Below, piece by piece: positions 17,401 to 51,060 of a stretch of 64,000 nucleotides of DNA. Under the pieces are notes generated by a model that searched no databases, had not been told where the DNA came from, and saw only the letters and a program-made list of their open reading frames with translations. The position numbers were made by a program, and so were the translations under genes. Position 1 is the first letter of the stretch. Each line of letters opens with the position of its first letter. The stretch lies in NCBI RefSeq assembly GCF_021869535.1, contig NW_026262712.1, positions 110,422,001 through 110,486,000 of the forward strand, read 5' to 3'. Source of the stretch: Mytilus californianus (taxonomy: Eukaryota).

Positions 17401-20279
17401 ATGTGTCCCATGTCCTCAGTTTTATAGACTGTTTCATAAAGCAGTCTAAAAATGAATAATTTTACTTGCTATAATTTGGATTTAGAATGTATTTCAGTTT
17501 GTTGTCAGGAAAAAAATATTGGTTGTTTAAATCATTATAAACGACAAGTCTTAAATCAATATTATTTTACAAAATGAAAAGAAATGGGATTCATCATCCA
17601 GAACTTTGCACCTATTACAAAGTCTTTGGTGGCATGGCATATTCTTATATCTTCAAGTTTCAAAAGCGAGGAGATTGATCACTCATTCTAAATTTGCATA
17701 CAAGTTTTCTTATATCAAGATTTCGGTATGTCAAATAATACTTTAATTTTGTTTAGATTCAGTTTTATATGACTGTATAAATAATAGAAGTTTACTGCTA
17801 GTATTTTTATCAAGTGAAGATACTTTATTTTCATATACTTCTTTATATCATTGTTCAAGTTCATTTTTATAGTATTTCTTACGTAGATTCTTACAGACTC
17901 TATATTTGATTTAAGGTATCATTTTGATATTTGCATGTTTAACGCTCTGCTTGCTCCTCAACAATTTACCGCTTTAGTTTCTATGTTGTTTACAGTGGTT
18001 ATCAGAATCTTTTCTGTAAATATAATGTTTCTCGTAAAAAATATATTATAAATTTATTTTTTCATTGCGTCTTTCATTGGAATTTTGTTAATAGAACAAA
18101 ACACTGGAAATGATATATATTCAAGCACAGAATTTCTAACATCTTCCTACAGACGTGATATACTCAATAATTCATATAACAAAATGTTCTTTGTTCTGAT
18201 GATCTGACAATTTTAATCACTTCCTGGCCTTTTAATGATACTGCCGATTTCAATTTAATCTTATGATGAAACTTTACGAAACCTGGTAGGAGTGTTGTTT
18301 TGGACCGGAATAAAATTACCGTACCAGGGCACAGTACATACTTTTGACTCCGAGGCGATCAGTCTTTGCTTTTACTCCTTAATGCCACATGCTTACAATG
18401 CAGCGAAGACGTTTAAAAGTCATTGGTTTAATCTGACTTATGATCGAACTCACGATCTCATGCACACCAGACAAGCACTACAGCGATACCTCCGAATTTG
18501 TTAAATTGTAATATAATCTGACGAATGTTTTGTTTACTCAAATGCACACTGTTATTATTAATGTCTTAATTTCTATTACAGATTTTTATAAATTTTCCAA
18601 CAAGAATTCGTTACTGAACAAAAGTATTGCCCGTTTGAACATTAATAAGCAAAACACTTTATTTGTGTTTACAATAAAGGTATTTTATTTTGTAGAATAA
18701 AGAGTATGTTATACAAAATAATAAATGCACGACACTGAACTACACAACATCTGTTGAATTAGCCTGTATACCAAGTAAGTAGATTACTAGAAATTAAATA
18801 TATCGTTGACGCAATAAAGATTATTCGCATTCAGTTGACAACAGATATTTTGAACACAAAACTATACGATGCTTTCCATTTCCCCCAAAGTGTTTATCAG
18901 AATGAGTATAGTAACATATTCTCTTTCCAATAGGCCGTTCTCTTTCAGAGTAGATTCGATAGTTCATTACATCCCTGCAGTTTTCCTTTCGTAGTAGTAA
19001 TATTCTCTATTCATCATCATAGGGTTTTATAAACCAGGATACATTCATTAAAAAATCAAATACTGTCCGTTTAAGCTCATTCACTCAAATGATTTAAAAT
19101 ACGAAAATGTGTATGGTGAAATTACTGTTGTTGCTGGTAGGTATTTGATTGTTTCTGTTAAATTTATTCACTTAACTTTCCTAGACCCGTGGCTATTCAG
19201 AGCTTGTCATATTGTATAAATAATTGACTATTTTTGAAGACCGTATGTTGGCTTCTAGATGTCTTATTGTTTTTGTCTGTCTCAATCCTTCCTGAAGTAA
19301 ATATTCAGTAATCATAAAAAGCGAGAATAGTAATACAAAATAATAAACAAAAAGCCGTATGGTATGATTTCCGTGTGCACCTGTTACTGAAATAACTCTA
19401 ATGTTCGCGCCAGACCAAACGTTGGCCTCCTTAAATAAAAAAGATGAAGAGCACAAAACCAAAAGGATATAAACAGAACTGTTCAAACCATTATTATTAT
19501 AAGTTCAAATTTATTTTGGCCTTCCTCAATTTAATTTCAGTGGGATCTAAGATACTGTCAAGGTCATATGTTGGCGCTGGAATGACAAAACTTAATGCAA
19601 CACTTTACAAGTATATGGATATAACAGGAACAAGGTTTTACTTTGAAGTTGTTGACGATGGCTGTATTCCTTTAATGACAGATACAGCAAGTCCAAACTG
19701 GCTCGGAGGTAGAGGAATTACATTTAAAAAAGATTCTTTTCACTTTTCGAAATAAATTTAGTAATCGAGTAAATGTTTAGTTTGTAATACTAGTATGTGT
19801 ATCAAGATTATTTGCAGAGTAATATTTCCATAACATTTTCAACAAGTTAACTGTAGATGTTGATCAACATTAAAGAAAAATCCGGAAATCGTTACATCAA
19901 ATGCAATAGGTAATACAGATCAAAATATGCTGTACGCAATTGCAAAATCCATTGTATTGCAATGACAATCAGACAAGACTCAGCTGTACACGATAGCCAC
20001 AACAACTGTTTTAATAAGCAGTTGGAAACACAGATCATATGTTACCTGCCGTAGAGATAGACGGTAATAGGGTGTGATAAAAGTTTTATATTAAAAATCG
20101 AACGAAAACCTGAATCTGAAAATTGATCGTTTTAAAACTGTCACACAGATTTGTTTGACATTGTATCCTGTTATTTTACAGAGGGAAGTAAGAAAACAAC
20201 AGTAACTTACATGGGAATCAGCAAAGGAATCCAGAACCCTTCCGTATTCAACGTACCAGCAATTTGTGTAAGCATTTGA
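2308..20279 (+). CDS. Ependymin-related secreted protein, five coding exons, about 192-195 aa
   Basis: Exons 2308-2439, 6370-6480, 18696-18774, 19541-19708 and 20182-20267 (or to the stop at 20279) have GT-AG boundaries with matching phases (0,0,1,1) and join into one open frame: MFGYLIFLSFLGSVLC-CCFPKQWEG...SVDYNKG...IILQDFNK-NKEYVIQNNKC...LACIP-MGSKILSRSYVGAG...DDGCIP...-GIQNPSVFNVPAIC. Signal peptide, CCxPxQWEG, CIP twice and the F-x-x-P-x-x-C end are ependymin-family hallmarks. The GTAAGC after the last Cys codon may be a donor to a sixth exon that I could not locate. Confidence 0.88.
3990..4500 (+). mobile_element. Penelope-like element fragment (RT C-terminal/thumb region), decayed
   Basis: TRIYDKRDDCSFPIVNFPFLDDDVPLNPSYSEYISQLVRY...GFRYHKL; same motif set as the fragment at 25.6-26.2 kb. 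Confidence 0.75.
6370..6480 (+). CDS. Ependymin-related gene, exon 2
   Basis: Acceptor CTTCGGCAG|, ESSSLSVDYNKGFAYYNQTTDTNSGQTKQIILQDFNK, donor |GTATAT; 111 nt, phase 0-0. Confidence 0.85.
6660..7058 (+). repeat. Direct copy of 8938-9345 (arm segment plus SINE-like interspersed repeat)
   Basis: CTTGACCAGAGCAACA...GAACCACTTTTCCTGATAAACTTAATTGTTTATAAAAAGTAAAAT...CACTTGTAT occurs at both positions. Confidence 0.8.
7104..7714. mobile_element. Non-autonomous DNA transposon (MITE) with TTAA target duplication, Kolobok-like
   Basis: TTAA at 7100-7103 and 7715-7718; 16-bp TIRs GGTAGATGGGGTGTCT / AGACACCCTATCTACC with one mismatch; termini RR...YY. The other arm of the inverted duplication (near 15543) has the empty site. 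Confidence 0.8.
9165..9870 (-). mobile_element. Abundant interspersed repeat plus Penelope-like 3' fragment, inserted in the left arm
   Basis: Reverse complement of the CATACAAGTGAGAGGTTTAGCTAGCTAT...GACAGTTG family (also near 5800, 15300, 38450, 39040-39500, 44910, 45500-45960), and PGLCQRTSRLFLKEFIGRYQDLVDTYSVSTSQII in ORF 9695-9979. Confidence 0.65.
12074..12707 (+). pseudogene. C1q-domain-containing (C1qDC) pseudogene nested in ependymin intron 2
   Basis: gC1q motifs IAFYAFMS...LIFDVLTT...GYNSHTGVFTSPKTGTYVF...VSKGDTAYVRTH...GRTTFS*WLL*. In-frame stops at 12654-12656 (TAG) and 12690-12692 (TGA where Gly is expected); stops and a frameshift near 12200-12242 after a signal-peptide-like start MLGFSKLTINICIYFYMKVLS at 12074 (start is inferred); AATAAA at 12721. 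Confidence 0.85.
14245..14890. repeat. Minisatellite, unit about 42 bp, about 15 diverged copies
   Basis: Consensus GGATAAAGGAACGATGTGTCGGTAATAAGGGGAACAAAATGGGT; it explains the four overlapping repetitive ORFs at 14173-14907. Confidence 0.95.
17260..18200 (-). mobile_element. Decayed LINE 3' end (C-terminal Cys/His region and tail)
   Basis: Minus strand reads DIRKLVCKFRMSDQ.../LAFET*RYKNMPCHQRLCNRCKVLDDESHF, ending AATAAAG followed by (TTA)n near 17260-17240; same type of C-terminus as the element at 1-979. The 5' limit is approximate. Confidence 0.75.
18696..18774 (+). CDS. Ependymin-related gene, exon 3
   Basis: Acceptor TTTTGTAG|, NKEYVIQNNKCTTLNYTTSVELACIP, donor A|GTAAGT; 79 nt, phase 0-1. 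Confidence 0.85.
19541..19708 (+). CDS. Ependymin-related gene, exon 4
   Basis: Acceptor TTTCAG|, (M)GSKILSRSYVGAGMTKLNATLYKYMDITGTRFYFEVVDDGCIPLMTDTASPNWLG, donor G|GTAGAG; 168 nt, phase 1-1; lies inside ORF 19444-19755. Confidence 0.85.
20182..20279 (+). CDS. Ependymin-related gene, exon 5
   Basis: Acceptor TTTTACAG|, (E)GSKKTTVTYMGISKGIQNPSVFNVPAIC, then either donor GTAAGC at 20268 or read-through VSI* ending at 20279. Confidence 0.8.
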
Positions 20280-31551: not shown

Positions 31552-33702
31552 TTATTTTAATTCAATATCTAAGAAATCAGATACTAAGCTTAAACCTTTT
31601 TTCAAAACAGGCGGCACCGAATCACGCTCAACCAAAGGCTGCAGAATCTCAATGGCAATATTTTTTGCAATACGTTTACCAGGATTAAAATGTTTGACAA
31701 ACAAATCTTTGTATATAAGAGGAAGTCTGCAGTAGAAAAGATAAAAATCCGTTAATATAAAATCAGGTATTGTCTCAGCTTCTCGAAGTGCTAGACCTAA
31801 ATGGATGATCGAATTCAGGTATTCCGCCGAAGTTGTACTTTGTAGATTAAAGTCTTTTAGTAAACGAAGAGCCTTCCATTTTTCAATATTGTTTCCTAGA
31901 TAATGATGGCATAGAAACAGTAAATAATACATTCGTATCTGCGGATGAACAATAAGCATGTCCTTCTCCAAATTTGCAGTTTGAAATTCTTCTTGATAAA
32001 ACATTATATGTGGCTTTGCTTTTGGAGTAAGGTAAAATAAATCAGAACACGAATGCTTATATCGCTGCACAAAATGTAATCCAATATTTTCTAACATTTT
32101 ACTACTGGGGTGAGGCTTCAAACCAGGAGTTATCATCTGATGATCGGTCGAACTTTTAAATTGACATAGTTGAATTATCTCTAAAGTTTTCCCTAGTTGT
32201 TTGCGTTGAAAAAAGAATTCGGCCAGTAGAAGCCAACCGGTATATGAATCAGAAAACGTACCTAGTATGGTATACCAAATGCATTTCTTGTAGTCTGGAT
32301 AGAATGTTTTATTACATTTTCGATTTTGTAAATTTGTATATCCATCATGTGATATCATAAATGGATAATGCTTCGCCAAAGATCCGCACAGTTTTGAAAA
32401 CCAAATGAAGCATACGTGTTTTAAAAGCTTACATTTTCTATGAGACATAATACAATAAATAGGCTGATATATGGCATTACTACCGCCATATCCTATCCCA
32501 TGCATATAATGTAAAAGCGGATAGATGATTGAGTCTATGTTAGAATAGTTTTTTCTGAACAATTCAGAAGTTAAAGGTGTTTTAATATGGTCAAACAAAT
32601 ATGAAAGAGTTTGTATTTGTTTTAAGGAATTATTTTCACTAGTGAAAAAATTACGCAAAAGTGATAGTAATAACTTCTTTTTAGGTACATCAATTTTTCC
32701 TTTTATCAAATTGTTCTTTGGTAGAAAGTAGTTTGGAAGGATATTGTACTGTATAAAAAATACTAGTCTTTTTATGCATGCTTGAAAGCATTCAAACAAT
32801 TTGCAAGGTTGCCATTCAGAAATCTGAGATTCTTCAATCATCCAGAATAATACTGTTTTCATAAAGTATGAACACATGGTATCTTTTATTTTTTGGTGAA
32901 CTACTAGTAATTCTTTTAATGTATATTTTAGTAACGCATAACACACAATTTGTGTATGATTAAACGAATGAACAAGCATTTTTTCCGCAATTGAGAAAGA
33001 CATTCTCCATTCGTAAGGATTTTCCTTCTTGTTGTTAAATTTACTTCCAATAGGTGCCAGTAAGACATTATCTCGTATTATATCTTCAATCAGTTCTGTT
33101 GGGGGCCATTCATAATTGCGAGGTCTTGTTATCCACTCTGCAGCTATTGTTGGCCACGAATGACATTTGTAAGTAGACAAGAAATCATACGATCCACAAA
33201 TGGTAGAAGAACAAGGACCATGTATCTCTGAAAAATTCTCCAAAAATGTGCTTGTAGCATTTGGCATATTTATGTTTTGTATTAACTGTTTGTAGTGTTC
33301 ATTTGATAATATAATGTGGTTTCCAGAGTACACATGGTTCGGTTGTATCCCATTTCTTTTTTTCATATGTAGCTCAATATGAACATATCCCGGTGGTGTA
33401 TTTTCGAAATCTAAAAAAAGTCCATATTGCAAGTCACTTGGTATTTCAGATTTTGTATTGTATACTGTGTCCACCTGGTTGATATACATAATATCTAAGT
33501 CACTCCCTGGTAAGTCTAAGCCTTCTGATTTACTTCCACTGGTCACTACTCGCCAATTAGGACTGTACTGTAAAGCATGATCTAGCACTTTAAAGAATAT
33601 CCTTCGTGCTCGGACGTCTTTTTCAGAGCCAACAATTTTGCAAAGAAAATCAAAAAGTTCAAGTGAGAAATTTGACTCTAGCATCGCGGCTGGAAATTCC
33701 AT
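31552..33702 (-). CDS. Mab-21 domain nucleotidyltransferase / cGAS-like receptor (cGLR) with C-terminal helical extension, 716 aa
   Basis: Uninterrupted ORF. NTase motif SGSKSEGLDLPGSDLDIM (G56-S57, D68, D70), PPGY, HGP, likely third acidic residue D173, WPTIAAEWITRPRNYEWP, EWRMSFSIAEKML, CSYFMKTVLFW, PNYFLPKNNL. A splice acceptor TTTTAATTGTAG| lies 2 nt before the ATG, implying a 5'-UTR intron. Confidence 0.93.
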   Translation of the reverse strand: MEFPAAMLESNFSLELFDFLCKIVGSEKDVRARRIFFKVLDHALQYSPNWRVVTSGSKSEGLDLPGSDLDIMYINQVDTVYNTKSEIPSDLQYGLFLDFENTPPGYVHIELHMKKRNGIQPNHVYSGNHIILSNEHYKQLIQNINMPNATSTFLENFSEIHGPCSSTICGSYDFLSTYKCHSWPTIAAEWITRPRNYEWPPTELIEDIIRDNVLLAPIGSKFNNKKENPYEWRMSFSIAEKMLVHSFNHTQIVCYALLKYTLKELLVVHQKIKDTMCSYFMKTVLFWMIEESQISEWQPCKLFECFQACIKRLVFFIQYNILPNYFLPKNNLIKGKIDVPKKKLLLSLLRNFFTSENNSLKQIQTLSYLFDHIKTPLTSELFRKNYSNIDSIIYPLLHYMHGIGYGGSNAIYQPIYCIMSHRKCKLLKHVCFIWFSKLCGSLAKHYPFMISHDGYTNLQNRKCNKTFYPDYKKCIWYTILGTFSDSYTGWLLLAEFFFQRKQLGKTLEIIQLCQFKSSTDHQMITPGLKPHPSSKMLENIGLHFVQRYKHSCSDLFYLTPKAKPHIMFYQEEFQTANLEKDMLIVHPQIRMYYLLFLCHHYLGNNIEKWKALRLLKDFNLQSTTSAEYLNSIIHLGLALREAETIPDFILTDFYLFYCRLPLIYKDLFVKHFNPGKRIAKNIAIEILQPLVERDSVPPVLKKGLSLVSDFLDIELK

Positions 33703-34106
33703 AGCTACAATTAAAAGAGTTATAGCATGATCACTGAATAATGAAAAACGTAAAATATGTTTAGGTCAAGCCTTGAAATTGAAAACAAAAAGTTAAGACC
33801 TTTCAATTATGTTCTCAGTTTTAAAAATCATAAAGAATGATAGAAACCATATAATTCATGCTTCGGAATGGCAAGCATGTGCTAGAATCAAAATAGTTGT
33901 TTGTTTAAACATTTTAAACAATATATTATCTAAAAGAAACTGCTTTCAATTCAGTGACAAGTTCAGTATAGTGTGGAGGTAGGTCCATGGTATCAATTCG
34001 GCCTAAAATCAATTATTTTTAAATATATTTTGAAAAATTTTGTTGTTGTGTTTTAGATAGAAGACACCAACATAAATCTGTAAAGCTAGGTGGATAAGAT
34101 ATTGCA

Positions 34107-35107
34107 CAGTGATCTGGAAGGATTTTTTCTCTATGGGCCCAGGACCCCCCAAAAATAAATTCAATGGGCCATTTTTAGAATTAATGGGCCATGTTGTCAA
34201 ATGAGTGGGCCATTCGTTTACAATAAAAAAATAAAAAAAGTGTATATTTCACTTTACTTACAAGTATGATTCTAATTAATATCATGGATATTGTTCCTGT
34301 GGTTTTGTAATTTCAATTTCAATGAATATACAATAACTTCTTCCAAACCGGGCAATATTCACGATAACCTTTATTTACAATGTTAAAACTGGTACTGTTC
34401 CCTTGTTCATGTTCATGGTTTTTGTAAATTAAATTTGTGTCTTCGTCGATACCATACTTATTAGAGGACGTTTATGGCATTTCCTCTGCACTTGTATTAT
34501 TATTACTTCATCACGATAACAAGAATAACAGTAGAGAGCAACGTTAATTAATAAGACACAACAACAATTCACTGAAGGCATGTTTATAAAATGTCAAAAC
34601 GAGCCAAAGACCAAACAAATAGACAAGGACAGTTAAGCCCGTTTATTGAGACAAATACTATGCTATTCATAAAAAGGCTTTTGGGTTTTTCAATCGAAAT
34701 AATAGCAAGCTTACTTAAAAGATTATAATTAGAGAAGAATTCTCGCCTGTACTAGCCAATTTTCACAAATTTAAAGTTGTTTATAAAAAAATATATCATG
34801 AATGATGGTTAATTACGTTTTTTGGGTAATCAGTCATATCGCATGTTGCTATTATTACCATAGGAAAACACCCGAGACGTCCCAAAAATATATAGGTGCT
34901 CCTATAATTGGAGTAAACACTACACAGTTGTGTACTCACACATGGCGGCACGAAATACAATCGGAAATCCATTTGACGATATCTCAACGTTTCAAAACGA
35001 AGTGAAAAATATCATGCGCCACGCGGGCGCTTACATTTGTCACTCTATCCGCCATTTCTGGTCGATAAGCGCAATTGGCGCAAGGCGCACGTCCTTCCCG
35101 ATCACTG
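34107..35107. mobile_element. Non-autonomous hAT-like DNA transposon, 1001 bp, present only in copy A
   Basis: TIRs CAGTGATCTGGAAGGA / TCCTTCCCGATCACTG; 8-bp target duplication ATATTGCA (34099-34106) / AAATTGCA (35108-35115); four subterminal TGGGCC motifs at about 34135-34212; empty site GATATTGCATACAACG near 41568 in copy B. Confidence 0.9.
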
Positions 35108-38100
35108 AAATTGCATACAACGTATATTGAATTAATTAACTAATATTTGTCTCTAGATGTTCATTTTCTTATTGTCTGTCCTTGCTGCTTACTATCTATA
35201 TTTTTTTTTGGTTTTAACATAAAATATAACATGGTTACAGTAATGAGGAAAATGAAATTCTATGCACAAAATAGATCAAAAAAAAAATTTAAAATGAAAC
35301 GGTAACTTACTTCAATAATGATATGCACGCAACTTTTATATGGTAATATGTTGACTGTAGAACATGAACGATTCTGTTTTTATATACTCATGCACCTTCC
35401 GTGTTGTTCATAACGTTCCCAAAATTTGTTTTTTCATTGTTTTACTTTATAGATATTCATATTAGTTATATTGTAAAAGAAATTATTTCATTTACAAGGA
35501 AGTTGTCTAAAAATTAGTGTTTTTTAGTTAATTCTTCCTTAAAAATAAAAGAACTATGTAACCGCTTCGTTGGTCTCGTGGTATCGTGCGGGAGGTCACG
35601 GATTCAATTTCTGGCCGATACAAACTGAAAACTTTGTTATTCGTGGAAAACAAACTATACACAAAACAAAACTGAGAATATGCACCCTCTTTATATGTAA
35701 AAACGCTCAGTGCAATATAAAAGTTCAAGTTTAAAAACTTTACATAAATGTAGGAGTAAGCCGGACTACTCTGCATGCCTTATATTATCATATAATTGAG
35801 AATGGAAACGGGGAATGTGTCAATGAGACAACAACCCGACCAAAAGAGCAGAAAACAGCACAAGGCCACCAAATGGGTCTTTAACACAGCGAGAAAATTC
35901 CGCACCCGGAGGCGGGCTTTAGCTGGCCCTTAAGCAATAATGAATACTAGTTCAGCGAAAATGGAAGTCACGCTAAACTCCGAGACATATACATGATCCA
36001 AAATTGAAAAAAAATATACAAGACTAACAAAGGTCAGAGGTTCCTGTCTTGGGACAGGTGCAAAAATGTGACGGGGTTAAACATGTTTTGTGAGATCTCA
36101 ACTCTTAGCAAAAATATCATACATTTATATTCTGTATAAGTTGCATTTTACAAAGTATTTCTACGAGCACACATACATATACATATTTGGTGACACTTAA
36201 ACGATCACAGGAGAAAAAAAATAAAAACAAAAACCGGATTTCAACTGTCTTGCTATAACTTTAGCCAATGTGGAATAAACAAACACACGCATGTAGTAAA
36301 ACACAGTTCAAAAGTAGTCCGAGTCCGATGTTAGAATATATGGGTAATTAAAGAAACTCAGCAAAATGACAATGACAAAAATAAATTAACAAATGGCTAC
36401 TAGCAGTTACTGACATTCCAGCTCCAGACCTCAATTGCCTTAATTACCAAAATGCCAAAGCTCATGCAGCAACCTGTCATTTTTTAAAATTCAAACCAAA
36501 ATTTTGACAAAATGCAAACCATTAGTACATGTATTAACACCAGGTACATAATTTAAAAGTTGTATCTTGAAAACTGTAGTCATATACTTATTAACTTTCC
36601 AATTCAAGGGGCCAATGAATATTTACTAAAACTACAAATGAGCAATAAATACATACTTGTCCATCTTGCATTAATCATGTGTTATCTAAATGTCTTTGAT
36701 TTTGTGTGTCGTTATTTGATCAGTTGCTGGCTTATTGTATATATCCCACATCTCCCTTTATTCCAAAAAAGGAATTTACCAAGTTGAACGCTTTATTTTT
36801 TTTTAACATTACTTGTATACTTGTTAAATAAAACTCCTTATAAGACTGCGAATGCCCTTGGGCCTTTTTCGTTGCTTATACAGGCACCTTTTTCAATCGT
36901 CTGTGAGTCGTTTTGTTCCCCACTTTGTAAAATGGTGCGTTTTTAGTCATCTTTACTTGTACAGTATGTCCAACTCAACACATCAAAAACAAATCCATCC
37001 CTGAAGACCCAAACGTAAATTAACATGAATCTAAAATAAACATGTTAAGGATGTACACCTCTGAGGAGCCAACAATTTCTAGAATTAAACTCTTTTTCTT
37101 AACCTGATTTTTGGGTTTATATGACTGTAAAAAAATAATTGGTGAAGAAAAAATCATATGATGGTGCACTTCTTTTTTTGCTACGGCCATTTGAAAGTAC
37201 ACAATTTTGAAGATTTTCCCATTTTTCATCAACTTTTACCCATTTTGAGGCTAATATTATGAAAAAAATCACAATTTCACAATTAAACTTTTTTCATACT
37301 TTCACTAAAGATGAAGTGGACCAATCTGAATAAATTTTACTTAAAAAAAAACTATAGGTAGGTGTTAATATAAGAAAGTTTTATAAAATTTTGTTGCTTT
37401 TTCGTGTCAAATTTGCTATGCTGTCAATTTTGTAAATTTGGGATTTTTCTAATTTTTTTTAGAACAGACAGCATATTATTTCAACTTCTTTGTTATAAAT
37501 GATTGAAAAAATACATATCTAAGAATCTGAAAAGAAAAAAATTGATATGGGATGTACATATTTCTGGTAAAATTATTTCTTATACCCTTCACCCATTTTC
37601 TCAACATTTTGGCTAAAGAGACTGACTTGATTGGTTATAAAATGTGAAAATTTTATTACTCAAATACTACCTATTGTAAATACACAATTTTTTCACAGAG
37701 TTAATTTTGATTATAATGTTTTTTAAATGCATTGATATTTTCCACTTGTATCACATGTTTTGGAAATAATTCCAGAATGAGATTTCAACGAGACTGAAAC
37801 GTAAGAAGGTCAGTTTCTTTTGTCGATTGTATAATATAGGTTAATGAAAATAATTTATTTCAGAATGAAATTGACAAAAAAAATGTAACGAGATCTGAAT
37901 AGTGTTTCCTCTGTAGTGTTTTGTAAATTTCCTACTAATTCAATATTACATTCCACTGATTTAATTTTATTTCGTCCTAACTGAGTGCACATTTAGTGTT
38001 GACATGCCATATTTTCATGGCTTTGTTAAGTTCGGCCAAATACCATCTTTCTTCTTGAACGTTCAATGCCAACAAATCATTTTCTGTCCGAGTTTCCACG

Positions 38101-39524
38101 TTGGCTTATACGGAGCGTTTTTTTGTTATTGCTGAATTCTTTTCCAAAGAAATTTTTATCCTATTTTGCTAGCAGCGTTTTGGCGATATTTCTAAAACGA
38201 ATGACGTTTAACAAAATTGCCAGTAATAGTAGTACAATTCTCCGTATGTTCACAAATTATCCCGAATTTCTATAATTTGGATTTCTACTTTTAAAATATA
38301 ATTTCATCGGAAACAGCCATGCATGAAAAAAAAAGAATTTATTGCAAGCAAAAAACAAACAAACAAAACATCTCGGTCTGCATAATAGCATATATAGATC
38401 ATTCGTACAAATGCTTACTTATGCGCACAAATCAATCGTCCAAATGCGACTGCCATACAAGTGAGAGGTTTAGCTAGCTATAAAACCAGGTTTAATCCAC
38501 CATTTTCTACATAAGGAAATGCCTGTACCAAGTCAGGAATATGACAGTTGTTTTCCATTCGTCAGATGTGTTTGAACTTTTTATTTTGCCATTTTTATAA
38601 AGGACTTTTCGTTTTGAATTTCCCTTGAAGTTCGGTATTTTTGTTATTTTACTTTTTATCAATAGAAATAGAAAAAGTAAAAAGTAAATAGAATAAGAAG
38701 AAGGGGAGGAAGACAACGAAGCAATTAAAGTCAAATAATGTTTTGCATCAAAGTTCTAGGCACTCGGTATCTATGCTAAATTACAATGAAAATAAATCAT
38801 GTTTACTAAAAATAAAACGTTATTTTTGTGTCGTCGACCGCCAGAAACACGACGGAACCTTCTGCATTGACTTGCATCTATAAACGTTAATATCGTCTAC
38901 TTGTATCACATGTTTTCGAAATAATTCCCGAAAGAGATTTCAACGAGACTGAAACATCAGAAGAATTCATCCTTAAACATAAAACGGCGTAAGAGTGTTA
39001 CGGTAAGTGACGCCACTAACTAGTTATCTTGCGACGTCTCTATATTATTAACCTTTAGTCCATTTTTGGTAATATCCTTTTGGCGTACGTCGGTATTTAT
39101 ACATCCCGCCATTGTGTTATTGTGCAATGGTCATTTTTTGTATTCTTGTCTTTCATTTTTGCTAATGTGCTTTGTCTATAGAGTGTCTATATACCATTTT
39201 ATTTTTCTTTGTTGACATAGTTGTTTGTTTTTGTAGTGATTGAGATAATAACACAATGTTGACTGCTGTACCCTAATTTTTGACATTTTTACCTATTACA
39301 TTGTATTATAAAAATAAGGAGTTGAAGTATGATTGCCAATGAGACAACTATCCAACAAAGTTCAAATAAAGTGGATGTTTGTATTGTTCACACATTGTTG
39401 TCAATATAATGGAATTTTATGCGACTGTCATACAAGTGAGAGGTTTAGCTAGCTATAAAACTAGTTTTAATCCATCATTTTCTACATAAGGAAATGCCTG
39501 TATTAAGTACTTTATCAATTTTTA

Positions 39525-40300
39525 TATGACACGAATCCAGGAAAGCGCTTCGGACGCACGAAGTTTATAAAGTGTTGTTTTAATATTTTAAAGCACTGGG
39601 TCGATATCGCTGACGGCTGACTATCTGTCCGCGAGAGTATCATTCGCACAATAATCAGTACTTCAGTACTGCCATAACATATAACAAATCTTTCTAAAAT
39701 TCTCCATTCATCAATTTATAAATAAAAAAACTAAGATTTCAACTCCCTCAGGCCAAGTTTGCGTTAGATGGATTCGGCTATAATTTATTCTAGGTCCTTT
39801 TTAGGTCATATAGCTCCCCAATTCTTTCGGTTCTTATACACAATTGACATACAAATATTCGGCTATGCGCTTTCGTGATGAAGGTAAATCAAGAAAAGCG
39901 CTTCAGACAAACGAAATGTATAAAGTGTTGTTTTCATTTTTTACAGAACTGGGTTGATACCGCTGCTGGTGAACTATTAGCCCCTGATTATATCACCAGC
40001 TCAGTAGTCAGTACTTCGGTACTGAAATGATGTATAACGAACCTTTCTGAAACGGTATGTTTATAAATTCATAATTTTTTAAGAAATATAGGTTTAAACT
40101 CCCTCAGGTAAATTAAGTTGATGTCTATCATTTTAGGTCCTTTTTGGTCATATATCTCTCTCTAACTGCATAATTGGCATTCAAATATTCGGTTTTGAGC
40201 ATTCCTGATGAAGGTAAATCCAGAAAAGTGCTTCAGACGCATGAAATTTATAAAGTGTTGTTTTCATTTTTTTATATCCTGGTTTGCCTACATTTAATGC
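39525..40300 (+). mobile_element. Tandem retrozyme-like array: two full units (353 and 330 nt) bounded by three hammerhead motifs
   Basis: Putative cleavage triplets TTC end at 39551, 39904 and 40234. Units 39552-39904 and 39905-40234 are homologous along their length. Best motif 40199-40240: GCATTC-CTGATGA-AGGTAAATCCA-GAAA-A GTGC TTC-AGACGC. Confidence 0.75.
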
Positions 40301-41172
40301 AGGTTTACAATACTGAATAATACTGTTTTCATAAAGTATGAACACATGGTATCTTTTATTTTTTGGTGAACTACTAGTTCTTCTTTTAATGTATATTTTA
40401 GTAACGCATAACACACAATTTGTGTATGATTAAACGAATGAACAAGCATTTTTTCCGCAATTGAGAAAGACATTCTCCATTCGTAAGGATTTTCCTTCTT
40501 GTTGTTAAATTTACTTCCAATAGGTGCCAGTAAGACATTATCTCGTATTATATCTTCAATCAGTTCTGTTGGGGGCCATTCATAATTGCGAGGTCTTGTT
40601 ATCCACTCTGCAGCTATTGTTGGCCACGAATGACATTTGTAAGTAGACAAGAAATCATACGATCCACAAATGGTAGAAGAACAAGGACCATGTATCTCTG
40701 AAAAATTCTCCAAAAATGTGCCTGTAGCATTTGGCATATTTATGTTTTGTATTAACTATTTGTAGTGTTCATTTGATAATATAATGTGGTTTCCAGAGTA
40801 CACATGGTTCGGTTGTATCCCATTTCTTTTTTTCATATGTAGCTCAATATGAACATATCCCGGTGGTGTATTTTCGAAATCTAAAAAAAGTCCATATTGC
40901 AAGTCACTTGGTATTTCAGATTTTGTATTGTATACTGTGTCCACCTGGTTGATATACATAATATCTAAGTCACTCCCTGGTAAGTCTAAGCCTTCTGATT
41001 TACTTCCACTGGTCACTACTCGCCAATTAGGACTGTACTGTAAAGCATGATCTAGCACTTTAAAGAATATCCTTCGTGCTCGGACGTCTTTTTCAGAGCC
41101 AACAATTTTGCAAAGAAAATCAAAAAGTTCAAGTGAGAAATTTGACTCTAGCATCGCGGCTGGAAATTCCAT
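40294..41172 (-). pseudogene. Truncated duplicate of the cGLR (codons 1-286) with a nonsense codon
   Basis: Matches the first 286 codons of 31552-33702 except Q139* (CAG>TAG, 40758), S151G and L265E; homology ends at the duplication junction, giving TVLF-SIVNLH*. Confidence 0.93.
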
Positions 41173-44100
41173 AGCTACAATTAAAAGAGTTATAGCATGA
41201 TCACTGAATAATGAAAAACGTAAAATATGTTTAGGTCAAGCCTTGAAATTGAAAACAAAAAGTTAAGACCTTTCAATTATGTTCTCAGTTTTAAAAATCA
41301 TAAAGAATGATAGAAACCATATAATTCATGCTTCGAAATGGCAAGCATGTGCTACAATCAAAATAGTTGTTTGTTTAAACATTTTAAACAATATATTATC
41401 GAAAAGAAACTGCTTTCAGTTCAGTGACAAGTTCAGTATAGTGTGGAGGTAGGTCCATGGTATCAATTCGGCCTAAAATCAATTATTTTTAAATATATTT
41501 TGAAAAATTTTGTTGTTGTGTTTTAGATAGAAGACACCAACATAAATCTGTAAAGCTAGGTGGATAAGATATTGCATACAACGTATATTGAATTAATTAA
41601 CGAATATTTGTCTCTAGATGTTCATTTTCTTATTGTCTGTCCTTGCTGCTTACTATCTATATATTTTTTTGGTTTTAACATAAAATATAACATGGTTACA
41701 GTAATGAGGAAAATGAAATTCTATGCACAAAATAGATCAAAAAAAATATTTAAAATGAAACGGTAACTTACTTCAATAATGATATGCACGCAACTTTTAT
41801 ATGGTAATATGTTGACTGTAGAACATGAACGATTCTGTTTTTATATACTCATGCACCTTCCGTGTTGTTCATAACGTTCCCAAAATTTGTTTTTTCATTG
41901 TTTTACTTTATAGATATTCATATTAGTTATATTGTAAAAGAAATTATTTCATTTACAAGGAAGTTGTCTAAAAATTAGTGTTTTTTAGTTAATTCTTCCT
42001 TAAAAATAAAAGAACTATGTAACCGCTTCGGTGGTCTCGTTGTATCGTGCAGGAGGTCACGGATTCAATTTCTGGCCGATTCAAACTGAAAACTTTGTTA
42101 TTCGTGGAAAACAAACTATACACAAAACAAAACTGAGAATATGCACCCTCTTTATATGTAAAAACGCTCAGTGCAATATAAAAGTTTAAGCTTAAAAACT
42201 TTACATAAATGTAGGAGTAAGCTGGACTACTCTGCATGCCTTATATTATCATATAATTGAGAATGGAAACGGGGAATGTGTCAATGAGACAACAACCCGA
42301 CCAAAAGAGCAGAAAACAGCACAAGGCCACCAAATGGGTCTTTAACACAGCGAGAAAATTCCGCACCCGGAGGCGGGCTTTAGCTGGCCCTTAAGCAATA
42401 ATGAATACTAGTTCAGCGAAAATGGAAGTCACGCTAAACTCCGAGACATATACATGATCCAAAATTGAAAAAAAATATACAAGACTAACAAAGGTCAGAG
42501 GTTCCTGTCTTGGGACAGGTGCAAACATGTGACGGGGTTAAACATGTTTTGTGAGATCTCAACTCTTAGCAAAAATATCATACATTTATATTCTGTATAA
42601 GTTGCATTTTACAAAGTATTTCTACGAGCACACATACATATACATATTTGGTGACACTTAAACGATCACAGGAGAAAAAAATAAAAACAAAAACCGGATT
42701 TCAACTGTCTTGCTATAACTTAAGCCAATGTGAAATAAACATACACACGCATGTAGTAAAACACAGTTCAAAAGTAGTCCGAGTCCGATGTTAGAATATA
42801 TGGGTAATTAAAGAAACTAAGCAAAATGACAATGACAAAAATAAATTAACAAATGGCTACTAGCAGTTACTGACATTCCAGCTCCAGACCTCAATTGCCT
42901 TAATTACCAAAATGCCAAAGCTCATGCAGCAACCTGTCATTTTTTAAAATTCAAACCAAAATTTTGACAAAATGCAAACCATTAGTACATGTATTAACAC
43001 CAGGTACATAATTTAAAAGTTGTATCTTGAAAACTGTAGTCATATACTTATTAACTTTCCAATTCAAGGGGCCAATGAATATTTACTAAAACTACAAATG
43101 AGCAATAAATACATACTTGTCCATCTTGCATTAATCATGTGTTATCTAAATGTCTTTGATTTTGTGTGTCGTTATTTGATCAGTTGCTGGCTTATTGTAT
43201 ATATCCCACATCTCCCTTTATTCCAAAAAAGGAATTTACCAAGTTGAACGCTTTATTTTTTTTTAACATTACTTGTATACTTGTTAAATAAAACTCCTTA
43301 TAAGACTGCGAATGCCCTTGGGCCTTTTTCGTTGCTTATACAGGCACCTTTTTCAATCGTCTGTGAGTCGTTTTGTTCCCCACTTTGTAAAATGGTGCGT
43401 TTTTAGTCATCTTTACTTGTACATTATGTCCAACTCAACACATCAAAAACAAATCCATCCCTGAAGACCCAAACGTAAATTAACATGAATCTAAAATAAA
43501 CATGTTAAGGATGTACACCTCTGAGGAGCCAACAATTTCTAGAATTAAACTCTTTTTCTTAACCTGATTTTTGGGTTTATATGACTGTAAAAAAATAATT
43601 GGTGAAGAAAAAATCATATGATGGTGCACTTCTTTTTTTGCTACGGCCATTTGAAAGTACCCAATTTTGAAGATTTTCCCATTTTTCATCAATTTTTACC
43701 CATTTTGAGGCTAATATTATGAAAAAAATCACAATTTCACAATTAAACTTTTTTCATACTTTCACTAAAGATGAAGTGGACCAATCTGAATAAATTTTAC
43801 TTAAAAAAAAACTATAGGTAGGTGTTAATATAAGAAAGTTTTATAAAATTTTGTTGCTTTTTCGTGTCAAATTTGCTATGCTGTCAATTTTGTAAATTTG
43901 GGATTTTTCTAAATTTTTTTTAGAACAGACAGCATATTATTTCAACTTCTTTGTTATAAATGATTGAAAAAATACATATCTAAGAAATTTGAGAAGAAAA
44001 AATTGATATGGGATGTACATATTTCTGGTAAAATTATTTCTTATACTCTTCACCCATTTTCTCAACATTTTGGCTAAAGAGACTGACTTGATTGGTTATA

Positions 44101-45986
44101 AAATGTGAAAATTTTATTACTCAAATACTACCTATTGTAAATACACAATTTTTTCACAGAGTTAATTTTGATTATAATGTTTTTTAAATGCATTGATATT
44201 TTCCACTTGTATCACATGTTTTGGAAATAATTCCAGAATGAGATTTCAACGAGACTGAAACGTAAGAAGGTCAGTTTCTTTTGTCGATTGTATAATATAG
44301 GTTAATGAAAATAATTTATTTCAGAATGAAATTGACAAAAAAAAATGTAACGAGATCTGAATAGTGTTTCCTCTGTAGTGTTTTGTAAATTTCCTACTAA
44401 TTCAATATTACATTCCACTGATTTAATTTTATTTCGTCCTAACTGAGTGCACATTTAGTGTTGACATGCCATATTTTCATGGCTTTGTTAAGTTCGGCCA
44501 AATACCATCTTTCTTCTTGAACGTTCAATGCCAACAAATCATTTTCTGTCCGAGTTTCCACGTTGGCTTATACGGAGCGTTTTTTTGTTATTGCTGAATT
44601 CTTTTCCAAAGAAATTTTTATCCTATTTTGCTAGCAGCGTTTTGGCGATATTTCTAAAACGAATGACGTTTAACAAAATTGCCAGTAATAGTAGTACAAT
44701 TCTCCGTATGTTCACAAATTATCCCGAATTTCTATAATTTGGATTTCTACTTTTAAAATATAATTTCATCGGAAACAGCCATGCATAAAAAAAAAGAAAT
44801 GTATTGCAAGCAAAAAACAAACAAACAAAACATCTCGGTCTGCATAATAGCATATATAGATCATTCGTACAAATGCTTACTTATGCGCACAAATCAATCG
44901 TCCAAATGCGACTGCCATACAAGTGAGAGGTTTAGCTAGCTATAAAACCAGGTTTAATCCACCATTTTCTACATAAGGAAATGCCTGTACCAAGTCAGGA
45001 ATATGACAGTTGTTTTCCATTCGTCAGATGTGTTTGAACTTTTTATTTTGCCATTTTTATAAAGGACTTTTCGTTTTGAATTTCCCTTGAAGTTCGGTAT
45101 TTTTGTTATTTTACTTTTTATCAATAGAAATAGAAAAAGTAAAAAGTAAATAGAATAAGAAGAAGGGGAGGAAGACAACGAAGCAATTAAAGTCAAATAA
45201 TGTTTTGCATCAAAGTTCTAGGCACTCGGTATCTATGCTAAATTACAATGAAAATAAATAATGTTTACTAAAAATAAAACGTTATTTTTGTGTCGTCGAC
45301 CGCCAGAAACACGACGGAACCTTCTGCATTGACTTGCATCTATAAACGTTAATATCGTCTACTTGTATCACATGTTTTCGAAATAATTCCCGAAAGAGAT
45401 TTCAACGAGACTGAAACATCAGAAGAATTCATCCTTAAACATAAAACGGCGTAAGAGTGTTACGGTAAGTGACGCCACTAACTAGTTATCTTGCGACGTC
45501 TCTATATTATTAACCTTTAGTCCATTTTTGGTAATATCCTTTTGGCGTACGTCGGTATTTATACATCCCGCCATTGTGTTATTGTGCAATGGTCATTTTT
45601 TGTATTCTTGTCTTTCATTTTTGCTTATGTGCTTTGTCTATAGAGTGTCTATATACCATTTTATTTTTCTTTGTTGACATAGTTGTTTGTTTTTGTAGTG
45701 ATTGAGATTATAACACAATGTTGACTGCTGTACCCTAATTTTTGACATTTTTACCTATTACATTGTATTATAAAAATAAGGAGTTGAAGTATGATTGCCA
45801 ATGAGACAACTATCCAACAAAGTTCAAATAAAATGGATGTTTGTATTGTTCACACATTGTTGTCAATATAATGGAATTTTATGCGACTGTCATACAAGTG
45901 AGAGGTTTAGCTAGCTATAAAACTAGTTTTAATCCATCATTTTCTACATAAGGAAATGCCTGTATTAAGTACTTTATCAATTTTTA

Positions 45987-46765
45987 TATGACACGAATCC
46001 AGGAAAGCGCTTCGGACGCACGAAGTTTATAAAGTGTTGTTTTAATATTTTAAAGCACTGGGTCGATATCGCTGACGGCTGACTATCTGTCCGCGAGAGT
46101 ATCATTCGCACAATAATCAGTACTTCAGTACTGCCATAACATATAACAAAACTTTCTAAAATTCTCCATTCATCAATTTATAAATAAAAAAACTAAGATT
46201 TCAACTCCCTCAGGCCAAGTTTGCCTTAGATGGATTCGGCTATAATTTATTCTAGGTCCTTTTTAGGTCATATAGCTCCCCAATTCTTTCGGTTCTTATA
46301 CACAATTGACATACAAATATTCGGCTATGCGCTTTCGTGATGAAGGTAAATCAAGAAAAGCGCTTCAGACAAACGAAATGTATAAAGTGTTGTTTTCATT
46401 TTTTACAGAACTGGGTTGATACCGCTGCTGGTGAACTATTAGCCCCTGATTATATCACCAGCTCAGTAGTCAGTACTTCGGTACTGAAATGATGTATAAC
46501 GAACCTTTCTGAAACGGTATGTTTATAAATTCATAATTTTTTAAGAAATATAGGTTTAAACTCCCTCAGGTAAATTAAGTTGATGTCTATCATTTTAGGT
46601 CCTTTTTGGTCATATATCTCTCTCTAACTGCATAATTGGCATTCAAATATTCGGTTTTGAGCATTCCTGATGAAGGTAAATCCAGAAAAGTGCTTCAGAC
46701 GCATGAAATTTATAAAGTGTTGTTTTCATTTTTTTATATCCTGGTTTGCCTACATTTAATTCAGG
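45987..46765 (+). mobile_element. Duplicate of the retrozyme-like array in copy B
   Basis: Triplets end at 46013, 46366 and 46696, each exactly 6462 nt from copy A. Confidence 0.75.
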
Positions 46766-47604
46766 TTTATAAAAAAAAACACGCGTTTTGTTATTTTAAC
46801 AATCATAGTTTATTTCCAAATTGTATAGTCATATTTTTTACCTTTATTTTACCTGTTAAATTTTCACGGGAAAGGATACTGAGTTTTACTATTAGATTAA
46901 GGGAAATTGCAAAAATACTTGTAAAAAAAATATGTGCAATCTTGTGGAAATATCTTATAAATTTATCAGACAAAATGCATTGAATTTGAGAATTATTTGA
47001 AAAAAATATATAGGAAGGTTTATCGTTTTGACAAAACATCAACAATTTTGATTAATAATAAATTGTTAGTAAAATTCTAAAATATGTAAAAAATATAATG
47101 GTGAAACTTATGAATATAATAAGTACAATTTTATTATCTATTCACCTTATTTATTGTTTAATTTTTGTTAACACTTTTTTTTGAAATTTTGATATATAGT
47201 AAACCAATAAATTCTAATAGATAAATACAACTGTTAAGTAGCAAAGCATTACAATTGATATAATGTAAACAATAATTTGCATCCAAGTTACATTCTCTTG
47301 TTTCAATCAATAATTACGAGAGCTATTTTTTTAAAGTCAGTTTTTTTAGTAGTTTGTCTAAGCTGTGAGATGTTTGGCTTACAACTCAGGAAGGTATCGA
47401 TGAAGCTGATAAAGTACACCGGTACAACAATATTTACCGACTACGTGACAGAGTTTTGGCTTGAAAGATACCGCTTTTTATGGAACGTTATGTGTCTCGT
47501 TTGAATTGTTAAACATGTTGTAATGTCGGGGCCATTTTATAGATCACTATACGGTAGTGGATTTGTTCATTGTTGAAGGCTGCACAAAGCCAGACATAAT
47601 TTAA

Positions 47605-50932: not shown

Positions 50933-51060
50933 NNNNNNNNNNNNNNNNNNNNNNNNNNNNNNNNNNNNNNNNNNNNNNNNNNNNNNNNNNNNNNNNNNNN
51001 NNNNNNNNNNNNNNNNNNNNNNNNNNNNNNNNNNNNNNNNNNNNNNNNNNNNNNNNNNNN
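50933..51060. other. Assembly gap (128 N)
   Basis: Run of N in the sequence. Confidence 1.

What the first reader, a model, noticed from the sequence alone, without database searches (positions are those of the whole stretch)
31552..33702. Intact 716-aa cGAS-like receptor with a ~360-aa C-terminal extension between two ependymin paralogues
Seen: the only long ORF in the window, with a complete NTase motif (GS...SDLD and a likely third Asp, D173) and a long helical, TPR-like-looking C-terminal region (YTGWLLLAEFFF..., YYLLFLCHHYLG...). Known: animal cGLRs are Mab-21 enzymes that make cyclic dinucleotides for STING signalling and are greatly expanded in bivalves; most members have unknown ligands and products. 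Inference: this is an active, probably uncharacterised sensor, and the C-terminal region may replace direct nucleic-acid binding as the input or regulatory module. It sits antisense among transposon debris, as expected for a recently moved or dispensable immune gene.
Basis: partly seen in the sequence, partly recalled or inferred. Interest (0 to 1): 0.72.

Follow-up and report, generated by a model that had tools for sequence, protein, structure and literature searches.

The report
Mussel cGAS-like enzyme with TPR-like tail
This is an intact mussel gene for a cGAS-like innate-immune enzyme fused to a conserved helical, TPR-like tail; it belongs to a large bivalve gene family whose architecture is already catalogued but has never been studied functionally.

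Summary
The 716-codon ORF at 31552-33702 (-) is real and is the only long ORF in the window. Residues 1-337 form a cGAS/cGLR (Mab-21) fold. G56-S57, D68 and D70 are invariant in 70 relatives; D173 is D in 68 and E in 2. Residues 338-716 form a conserved, basic, all-helical TPR-like domain. Both halves are under purifying selection (omega 0.24 and 0.38 against M. trossulus).

It is not an orphan. It is identical to a predicted protein already in NCBI, apparently from Mytilus californianus. It has syntenic orthologues in M. coruscus and M. trossulus. Its tail is homologous (hhalign 99%) to the tails of about 680-aa Mab-21 proteins in oysters and pearl oysters. Li et al. 2023 already list cGLR-TPR fusions and more than 100 cGLRs per Mytilus genome.

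"Recently moved" is refuted, the ependymin neighbours are unverified, and RNA support is trace-level. A 99%-identical copy 7.5 kb away (40315-41172), truncated and carrying a nonsense codon, was not mentioned.

Most likely it is a catalytically competent cGLR whose tail acts as a regulatory or ligand/partner-binding module. The scan has noted other cGLR loci in this genome, on other DNA. Verdict: new member of a known kind.

The parts
31552..33702 (-). Single-exon CDS of 716 aa plus stop: cGLR-type Mab-21 protein with C-terminal TPR-like domain
   Evidence: ORF. 100% identical to the NCBI/UniRef protein P0167 on GCA_021869535.1 JAKFGE010000006.1. Orthologues are also single-exon.
32968..33702 (-). 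NTase core, residues ~1-245: spine helices plus a beta-sheet carrying the active site
   Evidence: AF2 pLDDT is mostly 85-97. Foldseek matches cGAS, Cv-cGLR1 and Sp-cGLR1 at E 1.6e-10 and TM 0.70 normalised to target. Pfam Mab-21 scores 20.1 bits, below the cut-off in this protein but above it in relatives.
33532..33537 (-). G56-S57 of the NTase G[GS] motif
   Evidence: Invariant in 70 of 70 family members.
33493..33501 (-). D68-L69-D70, the first two metal-binding acids
   Evidence: D68 and D70 are invariant in 70 of 70.
33184..33186 (-). D173, the third catalytic acid
   Evidence: D in 68 and E in 2 of 70. The family profile aligns it with the 'SVD' aspartate of mouse cGAS and of Sp-cGLR1.
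32692..32967 (-). Mab-21 C-terminal helical (HhH/H2TH-like) lobe, residues ~246-337
   Evidence: Pfam PF20266 E 9.5e-14. phmmer to cGAS E 5e-12 over residues 181-347.
31555..32691 (-). C-terminal all-helical TPR-like domain, residues 338-716, pI 9.2. Conserved core: N464-K465, D485, G489-W490, L493, F497, F596-L597, L615
   Evidence: AF2 domain model has pLDDT 77 and pTM 0.72. VIA Z 9-11 to TPR proteins. Profile hit to a TTC7B TPR helix at E 0.003. hhalign 99% to oyster and pearl-oyster tails. omega 0.38.
33705..33706 (-). Candidate splice acceptor (TTGTAG|CT-ATG) 2 nt upstream of the start codon, suggesting a 5'UTR intron
   Evidence: An X1 contig of 181 nt fits only up to 33704 and then continues for 35 nt unlike the window (table 8). 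This is an inference; the run's RNA status is a guess.
35150..35590 (-). Upstream non-coding block conserved in the orthologue and paralogue loci: candidate promoter or 5' exon
   Evidence: blastn gives 73% to M. trossulus L001, 92% to M. coruscus L002, and 71% to the paralogue locus L004 over 35249-35441.
34107..35106 (.). 1-kb high-copy MITE-like DNA transposon inserted ~400 bp upstream of the ATG, in copy A only
   Evidence: Absent from copy B, L001 and L002. Has 15-bp terminal inverted repeats and a ~6-bp target duplication. Depth is 1e3-1e4 in X15.
40315..41172 (-). Truncated pseudogene copy covering codons 1-286, with a Q139 nonsense change
   Evidence: The alignment of 32800-33760 with 40270-41230 shows only 4 base differences up to the breakpoint, one of them CAG>TAG at codon 139, and diverges from codon ~287 (ORFs).
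32845..46772 (.). Two units of a tandem segmental duplication (32845-40310 and 40315-46772), 99.3% identical
   Evidence: Self-blastn and repeat finder. Not present in the M. coruscus or M. trossulus loci. Depth is not doubled in DNA run X15.

Best explanation
The gene encodes a cGAS-like receptor (cGLR) of the Mab-21 / CD-NTase superfamily. It belongs to a subfamily expanded in bivalves in which the catalytic cage (residues 1-337) is permanently fused to a ~350-380-residue TPR-like alpha-solenoid.

Shown here: the fold; the intact and conserved GS / DxD / D active site; purifying selection on both halves; conserved synteny in three Mytilus species; and homology of the tail across mussels, oysters and pearl oysters.

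Inferred: the protein is an active nucleotidyltransferase that makes a nucleotide second messenger, probably a cyclic dinucleotide read by one of the several STING paralogues that Mytilus genomes encode. The basic TPR-like tail is inferred to be the regulatory module. It would either bind the activating ligand or partner, or gate or oligomerise the comparatively acidic catalytic core. Ligand and product are unknown.
For: Fold: Pfam Mab-21_C E 9.5e-14; phmmer to cGAS E 5e-12; family profile to Sp-cGLR1 E 1.3e-30 and cGAS E 5e-24; AF2 pLDDT 80, pTM 0.81; Foldseek E 1.6e-10, TM 0.70 to cGAS, Cv-cGLR1 and Sp-cGLR1.

Active site: G56, S57, D68, D70 in 70/70; D173 as D/E in 70/70. D173 aligns with the cGAS catalytic Asp.

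Selection: omega 0.30 overall, 0.24 for the core and 0.38 for the tail, against M. trossulus at dS 0.25.

Tail: conserved in all 70 relatives at 290-407 aa; hhalign 99.0%, E 5e-18 between Mytilus and non-Mytilus tails; TPR-like by VIA Z 9-11 and weak profile hits.

Charge split: core pI 6.4, tail pI 9.2; family medians 6.2 and 8.6.

Literature: cGLR-TPR fusions are listed as an architecture, nucleic-acid-sensing cGLRs tend to have high pI, and Mytilus genomes hold 119-218 cGLRs and 8-9 STINGs (Li et al. 2023).
Against: - There is no biochemical evidence for activity, ligand or product.
- RNA support is minimal. In true RNA-seq run X21 (about 6% sampled), depth over the CDS was about 1x in two bins and zero elsewhere.
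- The strict cGLR regular expression of Li et al. is not matched exactly: S55 replaces [QT] before GS, and the spacer between DxD and the third Asp is 100 residues rather than 50-90.
- The Pfam Mab-21 NTase model is below its cut-off for this protein.
- The TPR assignment rests on Z-scores below the tool's caution level for helical repeats, and this protein has no Pfam TPR hit.
- The M. coruscus orthologue's annotated tail diverges after about residue 650, possibly through a frameshift. The extreme C-terminus may therefore be dispensable.
Confidence: 0.6

Rival explanations
1. The enzyme is active but the tail is not a sensor. The TPR-like domain would act as a scaffold that localises the enzyme, oligomerises it, or recruits downstream effectors. 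Activation would come through the NTase core, or the enzyme would be constitutively active.
For: TPR domains are generic protein-protein interaction modules. The closest structural hits are co-chaperone, adaptor and peptide-binding TPRs: Sti1, Tah1, CHIP, LGN, PlcR, Rap. Six of the fifteen active cGLRs in Li et al. respond to an unknown ligand. A conserved Arg (R33/R34) sits on the spine helix of the core.
Against: The core is acidic to neutral (pI 6.4), unlike the nucleic-acid-sensing cGLRs described by Li et al.. Nothing distinguishes scaffold from sensor computationally.
Confidence: 0.2
2. It is a non-enzymatic Mab-21 protein, like MAB21L1 or MiD51, that uses the NTase fold only as a scaffold or nucleotide-binding module.
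For: Structural and sequence matches also include MAB21L1, MB21D2 and MiD51. The Pfam NTase model is sub-threshold. Spacing deviates from the strict cGLR motif.
Against: All three catalytic acids and the GS motif are retained in 70/70 relatives at about 25% pairwise identity, which is hard to explain without catalysis. The best profile matches are active cGLRs and cGAS, well ahead of MAB21L1 (E 1e-30 vs 3e-11). Li et al. describe the Mab21L1/2/3 genes as lacking a predicted functional active site.
Confidence: 0.1
3. It is a silent or decaying copy in a birth-and-death cluster: an intact ORF that is no longer used, in a locus that is being broken up.
For: Expression is trace-level in the one RNA-seq run sampled. 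A transposon sits 400 bp upstream of the ATG in this copy only. The adjacent duplicate is already a pseudogene. No annotated orthologue above 75% identity was returned for M. edulis or M. galloprovincialis. The M. coruscus tail may be frameshifted.
Against: A 716-codon ORF is intact in 32% GC DNA. omega is 0.3 at dS 0.25 with a full-length orthologue in M. trossulus. Synteny is conserved. Immune sensors are often lowly expressed or inducible, and only about 6% of one run was read.
Confidence: 0.08

Closest known systems
cGLR-TPR fusion architecture catalogued by Li et al. 2023 (cGLRs are a diverse family of pattern recognition receptors; bioRxiv 10.1101/2023.02.22.529553, Fig. 1C/S2A)
   Same: A cGLR catalytic domain followed by a TPR-type helical repeat module. 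It occurs in animals with radiated cGLR repertoires, including bivalves, and no function has been assigned.
   Different: In this Mytilus subfamily the tail is too diverged for Pfam or CDD TPR models (0 hits), so domain-based surveys would probably score it as single-domain. The relatives' accessions were not found in the stored supplementary tables, but one table was cut when stored, so inclusion is unknown.
Sp-cGLR1 (Stylophora pistillata, PDB 8GJY) and Cv-cGLR1 (Crassostrea virginica, PDB 8GJW)
   Same: Best solved relatives of the family profile (E 1.3e-30 and 5e-14) and of the model. They share the Mab-21 cage and the GS/DxD/D site.
   Different: These are proteins of about 350-376 residues without a C-terminal extension. 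They are activated by long dsRNA (Sp) or dsDNA (Cv) and make 3'3'-cUA or 2'3'-cUA. Ligand and product here are unknown, and the core here is acidic.
Vertebrate cGAS
   Same: The fold (TM 0.70), the catalytic triad positions, and homology across the C-lobe.
   Different: This protein has no disordered basic N-terminus. The cGAS zinc-thumb region was not examined here. About 19% identity, plus a 380-aa TPR-like tail that cGAS lacks.
TPR-domain receptors and adaptors (PlcR/Rap/AimR peptide sensors; Sti1/Tah1/CHIP; LGN)
   Same: The tail superposes on these at Z 9-11. Model residues 147-307 match 3-TPR modules at 2.1-2.8 A over 88-125 residues.
   Different: There is no significant sequence similarity. 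Z is below the level at which helical repeats are diagnostic. The tail has a ~70-residue insertion with a beta-hairpin and a low-confidence loop (residues ~518-586).

Membership tests
cGLR (cGAS-like receptor; criteria of Li et al. 2023) | Complete NTase active site: h[QT]GS X8-20 [DE]h[DE]h X50-90 h[DE]h | tested here: met
   All catalytic residues are present and conserved: G56-S57, 10 residues, D68-L-D70-I, then Y172-D173-F174. Two deviations from the literal pattern: S55 stands where Q/T is expected (the family has T in 42 and S in 27 of 70), and the second spacer is 100 rather than 50-90 residues.
cGLR (cGAS-like receptor; criteria of Li et al. 2023) | Sequence homology across both the NTase core and the C-terminal helix bundle | tested here: met
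   Pfam Mab-21_C E 9.5e-14. Pfam Mab-21 scores 20.1 bits here (below cut-off) but 30-52 bits in family members. The family profile matches Sp-cGLR1 at E 1.3e-30 over profile positions 154-349 and human cGAS over 102-339.
cGLR (cGAS-like receptor; criteria of Li et al. 2023) | Predicted structural homology to known cGLR / CD-NTase enzymes | tested here: met
   AF2 model pLDDT 80.3. Foldseek top hits are human and mouse cGAS, Cv-cGLR1 and Sp-cGLR1, at E 1.6e-10 to 1e-9 and TM 0.65-0.72 normalised to target.
cGLR (cGAS-like receptor; criteria of Li et al. 2023) | Ligand-activated synthesis of a nucleotide second messenger that signals through STING | not testable with these tools
   Needs biochemistry. 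The only support is that Mytilus genomes are reported to hold 8-9 STING genes.
Tetratricopeptide repeat (TPR) domain | Tandem 34-residue helix-turn-helix repeats recognisable by TPR sequence profiles | tested here: not met
   The window protein has no Pfam TPR hit. Only 4-6 of 69 family tails give weak TPR hits. The family profile gives one marginal hit to a TTC7B repeat at E 0.003.
Tetratricopeptide repeat (TPR) domain | TPR-type right-handed alpha-solenoid fold | tested here: inconclusive
   VIA-align lists almost only TPR proteins at Z 9.2-11.2. The tool warns that Z under about 13 is common for helical repeats. Foldseek best E is 0.087. I therefore call the domain 'TPR-like' and do not file it as a TPR family member.
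Non-catalytic Mab-21 proteins (MAB21L1-3, MiD49/51) | Loss of the catalytic acids / GS motif | tested here: not met
   The triad and GS motif are retained in 70/70 relatives, so the protein is not filed here.

The most novel reading that the evidence does not exclude
The basic TPR-like tail, and not the NTase core, is the pattern-recognition surface. On this reading, this ancient bivalve subfamily would sense its ligand (for example an RNA end, a peptide or a pathogen protein) through the solenoid and pass the signal allosterically to an otherwise acidic, nucleic-acid-blind catalytic cage. That would make it the first cGLR class with a separate sensor domain, built like an NLR or RLR rather than like cGAS.
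Probability: 0.2. Interest if true: 0.75.

Novelty: new member of a known kind. Interest (0 to 1): 0.4.

Why it matters
Most animal cGLRs have unknown ligands, and bivalves hold the largest repertoires. This analysis shows three things about the long, about 680-720-aa form. It is an old architecture, shared by mussels, oysters and pearl oysters. It is under selective constraint. And it has a consistent charge split, with an acidic catalytic core and a basic helical tail.

If the tail is the input module, this subfamily would give a tractable way to ask how cGLRs acquire new specificities. Full-length versus tail-less enzyme assays would be the direct test.

By itself, though, this locus is one ordinary, already-annotated member of that family. 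The locus also illustrates birth-and-death dynamics: a very recent truncated duplicate and a transposon insertion in the putative promoter/5'UTR region.

Tried and rejected
- NCBIfam scan of the protein: no hit.
- Ependymin neighbours: Pfam and PDB searches of the two flank ORFs gave nothing. Only one shared exon-like segment was found. The last large protein search was not spent on this, because its length window would exclude ~200-aa ependymins.
- Upstream coding exon: the N-terminal extensions annotated in some paralogues are in-frame read-through directly upstream of the same ATG. That stretch is interrupted by a stop in the window. M1 is therefore kept as the start.
- Canonical AATAAA within 400 nt downstream of the stop: none seen, so the 3' end is undefined.
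- Whether Li et al. catalogued the close relatives: accessions were not found, but the relevant supplementary file was cut when stored, so this is inconclusive.
- Hammerhead or other Rfam RNAs next to the locus: none at the gathering threshold in the window, and none at E <= 1 in 39300-40500. TRF found no array there.
- Domain-domain contacts and mapping of conservation onto the model: not possible, because model coordinates and PAE are not exposed.
- Source organism of the many ~685-aa ENA relatives: only a sample code was returned (ERZ26168041).
Full report
**Observation**

It is the only ORF longer than 200 aa in the 64-kb window. The surrounding DNA is about 32% G+C, where long open frames do not arise by chance.

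The start codon is supported by gene models in relatives. The RefSeq models of the M. trossulus orthologue (P0002) and of the M. californianus paralogue (P0173) both begin at the homologous Met. The longer N-termini annotated for some paralogues are in-frame read-through of the sequence directly upstream, which carries a stop in the window.

**Identity of the N-terminal half**

- Pfam finds the Mab-21 C-terminal helical domain (E 9.5e-14, residues 254-335). The Mab-21 NTase domain scores just below threshold (20.1 bits).
- phmmer against PDB sequences finds cGAS (E 5e-12).
- A profile of 70 family members finds coral Sp-cGLR1 (E 1.3e-30), cGAS (E 5e-24), MB21D2, oyster Cv-cGLR1 and MAB21L1, in that order.
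- An AlphaFold2 model built on that alignment is confident (mean pLDDT 80.3, pTM 0.81).
- Foldseek places residues 1-~390 on human and mouse cGAS, Cv-cGLR1 and Sp-cGLR1 (E about 1e-10, TM 0.65-0.72 normalised to target).

**Active site**

G56, S57, D68 and D70 are invariant in all 70 aligned relatives. Most of these share only about 25% identity with the window protein. D173 is D in 68 and E in 2. In the profile alignments, the D173 column pairs with the 'SVD' aspartate of mouse cGAS and of Sp-cGLR1. I identify that aspartate as the third catalytic acid from my own knowledge of cGAS.

Against the literal cGLR pattern quoted by Li et al. 2023 there are two small departures. S55 stands where Q/T is expected; the family has T or S there. 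The second spacer is 100 rather than 50-90 residues.

**The C-terminal half**

Residues 338-716 are as well conserved among close relatives as the catalytic half.

An exhaustive HMMER search of 1.84 billion representative proteins with the tail alone found 35 relatives at E < 0.001. Of the 20 examined, 14 gave a Mab-21-family Pfam hit, and 10 of those are 590-750-aa proteins with the Mab-21 domains N-terminal to the matched tail. All those with names come from Mytilus species.

A profile search widened the family to 136 proteins. These include Pinctada imbricata, Crassostrea angulata and many ~685-aa proteins from an unnamed ENA assembly. All 70 that I aligned have 290-407 residues after the Mab-21 domain.

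A profile-profile comparison of Mytilus tails against non-Mytilus tails gives 99.0% probability and E 5e-18 over 286 columns. The fusion is therefore ancestral to at least mussels plus oysters and pearl oysters.

**What fold is the tail?**

- The domain model is all-helical (about 18 helices, pLDDT 77, pTM 0.72).
- Foldseek gives nothing significant (best E 0.087), but its weak list is TPR and solenoid proteins.
- The exhaustive VIA-align search returns almost exclusively TPR proteins at Z 9.2-11.2: PlcR, Sti1/Hop, Tah1, CHIP, LGN/Pins, Rap, AimR and APC/C subunits. Model residues 147-307 fit 3-TPR modules at 2.1-2.8 A. The tool cautions that Z below about 13 is common for helical repeats.
- At sequence level, the family profile touches one TPR of TTC7B (E 0.003), at the invariant 'GWLLLAxFF' block.
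- Only a handful of the 69 tails give weak Pfam TPR hits (6 for TPR_8, 5 for TPR_2, 4 for TPR_12). The window protein gives none.

I therefore describe the domain as TPR-like and do not file it as a TPR family member.

**Selection, orthology, synteny**

- Against the M. trossulus orthologue (dS 0.25), omega is 0.30 overall: 0.24 for the core and 0.38 for the tail. Against M. coruscus (dS 0.09), it is 0.49. No formal test of omega < 1 was run.
- The M. coruscus annotation diverges after about residue 650 in a way that suggests a frameshift.
- A maximum-likelihood tree puts the window protein with M. coruscus CAC5369742 and M. trossulus LOC134685171 (100/100). This group is sister to a paralogue clade, inside a Mytilus-specific subfamily.
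- The flanks are colinear with the M. coruscus locus on both sides (90-95% identity) and with several blocks of the M. trossulus locus.

The gene has therefore stayed in place since these species split, so 'recently moved' is refuted.

The protein is 100% identical to an entry already in NCBI and UniRef. That entry lies on GCA_021869535.1 contig JAKFGE010000006.1, the same contig that carries M. californianus LOC127704635 about 500 kb away.

**Expression**

Only one read-laying run was allowed. In the true RNA-seq run X21 (about 6% of it read), the CDS had about 1x depth in two bins (32773-33166) and none elsewhere. In those bins all first mates lay on the + strand, as expected for a minus-strand RNA in a dUTP library.

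Small contigs of runs X1 and X3, whose RNA status is only a guess, carry CDS pieces. One fits up to 33704, two bases upstream of the ATG and directly after TTGTAG, then continues for 35 nt unlike the window. That suggests a 5'UTR intron, but I could not verify it.

Expression is thus unproven and at best low in that sample. Several distant paralogues occur on 2.4-2.9-kb Logan contigs. That size would fit assembled transcripts, but I did not test this.

**Charge**

The catalytic core is acidic to neutral (pI 6.4; family median 6.2). The tail is basic (pI 9.2; family median 8.6). The whole-protein pI is 8.7.

Li et al. report that nucleic-acid-sensing cGLRs have high predicted pI. Here, the positive charge sits in the tail.

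**Locus dynamics**

The gene's first 286 codons and about 6.6 kb of upstream DNA are tandemly duplicated. The units are 32845-40310 and 40315-46772, at 99.3% identity.

The second gene copy (40315-41172) has a CAG>TAG change at codon 139 and ends at the breakpoint, so it is a pseudogene.

The duplicate is absent from the M. coruscus and M. trossulus loci. In DNA run X15, contig depth is the same (about 12) over the copy-A-unique and the shared parts. The duplicate is therefore very recent, polymorphic, or an assembly artefact.

Copy A alone carries a 1-kb high-copy element at 34107-35106, with 15-bp terminal inverted repeats and a ~6-bp target duplication. It lies about 400 bp upstream of the ATG.

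**Context claims**

Repeats and transposon fragments around the gene are confirmed. A C1q-domain exon lies at 12327-12656 (+).

The 'two ependymin paralogues' could not be verified. One exon-like segment is shared by the flanks, but it matches no Pfam family or PDB chain.

**Comparison with what is known**

Li et al. 2023 describe the bivalve cGLR radiation: 218 cGLRs in M. galloprovincialis and 119 in M. coruscus, with 9 and 8 STINGs. They list cGLR-TPR fusions among the 13% of cGLRs that carry extra domains.

I found no functional study of a TPR-bearing or mussel cGLR in the searchable library.

This locus is therefore a new member of a known kind. What this analysis adds is that the long architecture is ancient, is mostly invisible to domain databases, and has a consistent acidic-core/basic-tail layout.

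**Verdict**

Most likely this is a catalytically competent cGLR with a regulatory or ligand/partner-binding TPR-like tail (confidence about 0.6). Interest is moderate.

No operator restriction was triggered.

Noticed in passing
window 40315-41172 (-) and 32845-46772: A tandem segmental duplication (two units, 99.3% identical) carries a truncated copy of the cGLR gene with a nonsense codon. It is absent from the orthologous M. coruscus and M. trossulus loci, and DNA run X15 shows no doubled depth. It may be polymorphic or an assembly artefact.
   Followed up: partly
window 34107-35106: A 1-kb very-high-copy MITE-like DNA transposon with 15-bp terminal inverted repeats (CAGTGATC.GGAAGG) and a ~6-bp target-site duplication (ATTGCA). 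It is inserted ~400 bp upstream of the gene's ATG in copy A only.
   Followed up: partly
window 39300-40500: The neighbouring first-stage note of a hammerhead-ribozyme array here gets no support from Rfam (no match at E <= 1) or TRF. blastn shows only a ~350-bp internal repeat at 74% identity (39534-39942 vs 39887-40272).
   Followed up: partly
window 12327-12656 (+): An exon-sized ORF encoding a C1q domain (Pfam PF00386, E 7.9e-13), another family expanded in bivalve immunity, lies ~19 kb from the cGLR gene.
   Followed up: no
window 19546-19710 (+) and 55779-55940 (+): A pair of exon-like segments, 42% identical over 55 aa, flanks the cGLR gene.
   Followed up: partly
window 14173-14842 (-): A 200-aa ORF made of a degenerate proline/histidine-rich repeat of roughly 25-30 residues (…THRSFIHPFRSPYY.HIVPLSTHF.PLI.DTSFLYPPILF…). 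It is probably a translated satellite or minisatellite rather than a gene.
   Followed up: no
L002:12517-18562 (M. coruscus): The M. coruscus orthologous locus has a ~6-kb insertion just downstream of the gene relative to the window. Its annotated protein tail diverges after ~residue 650, which looks like a frameshift.
   Followed up: no
window 50933-51060: A 128-base N run (assembly gap or masked stretch).
   Followed up: no
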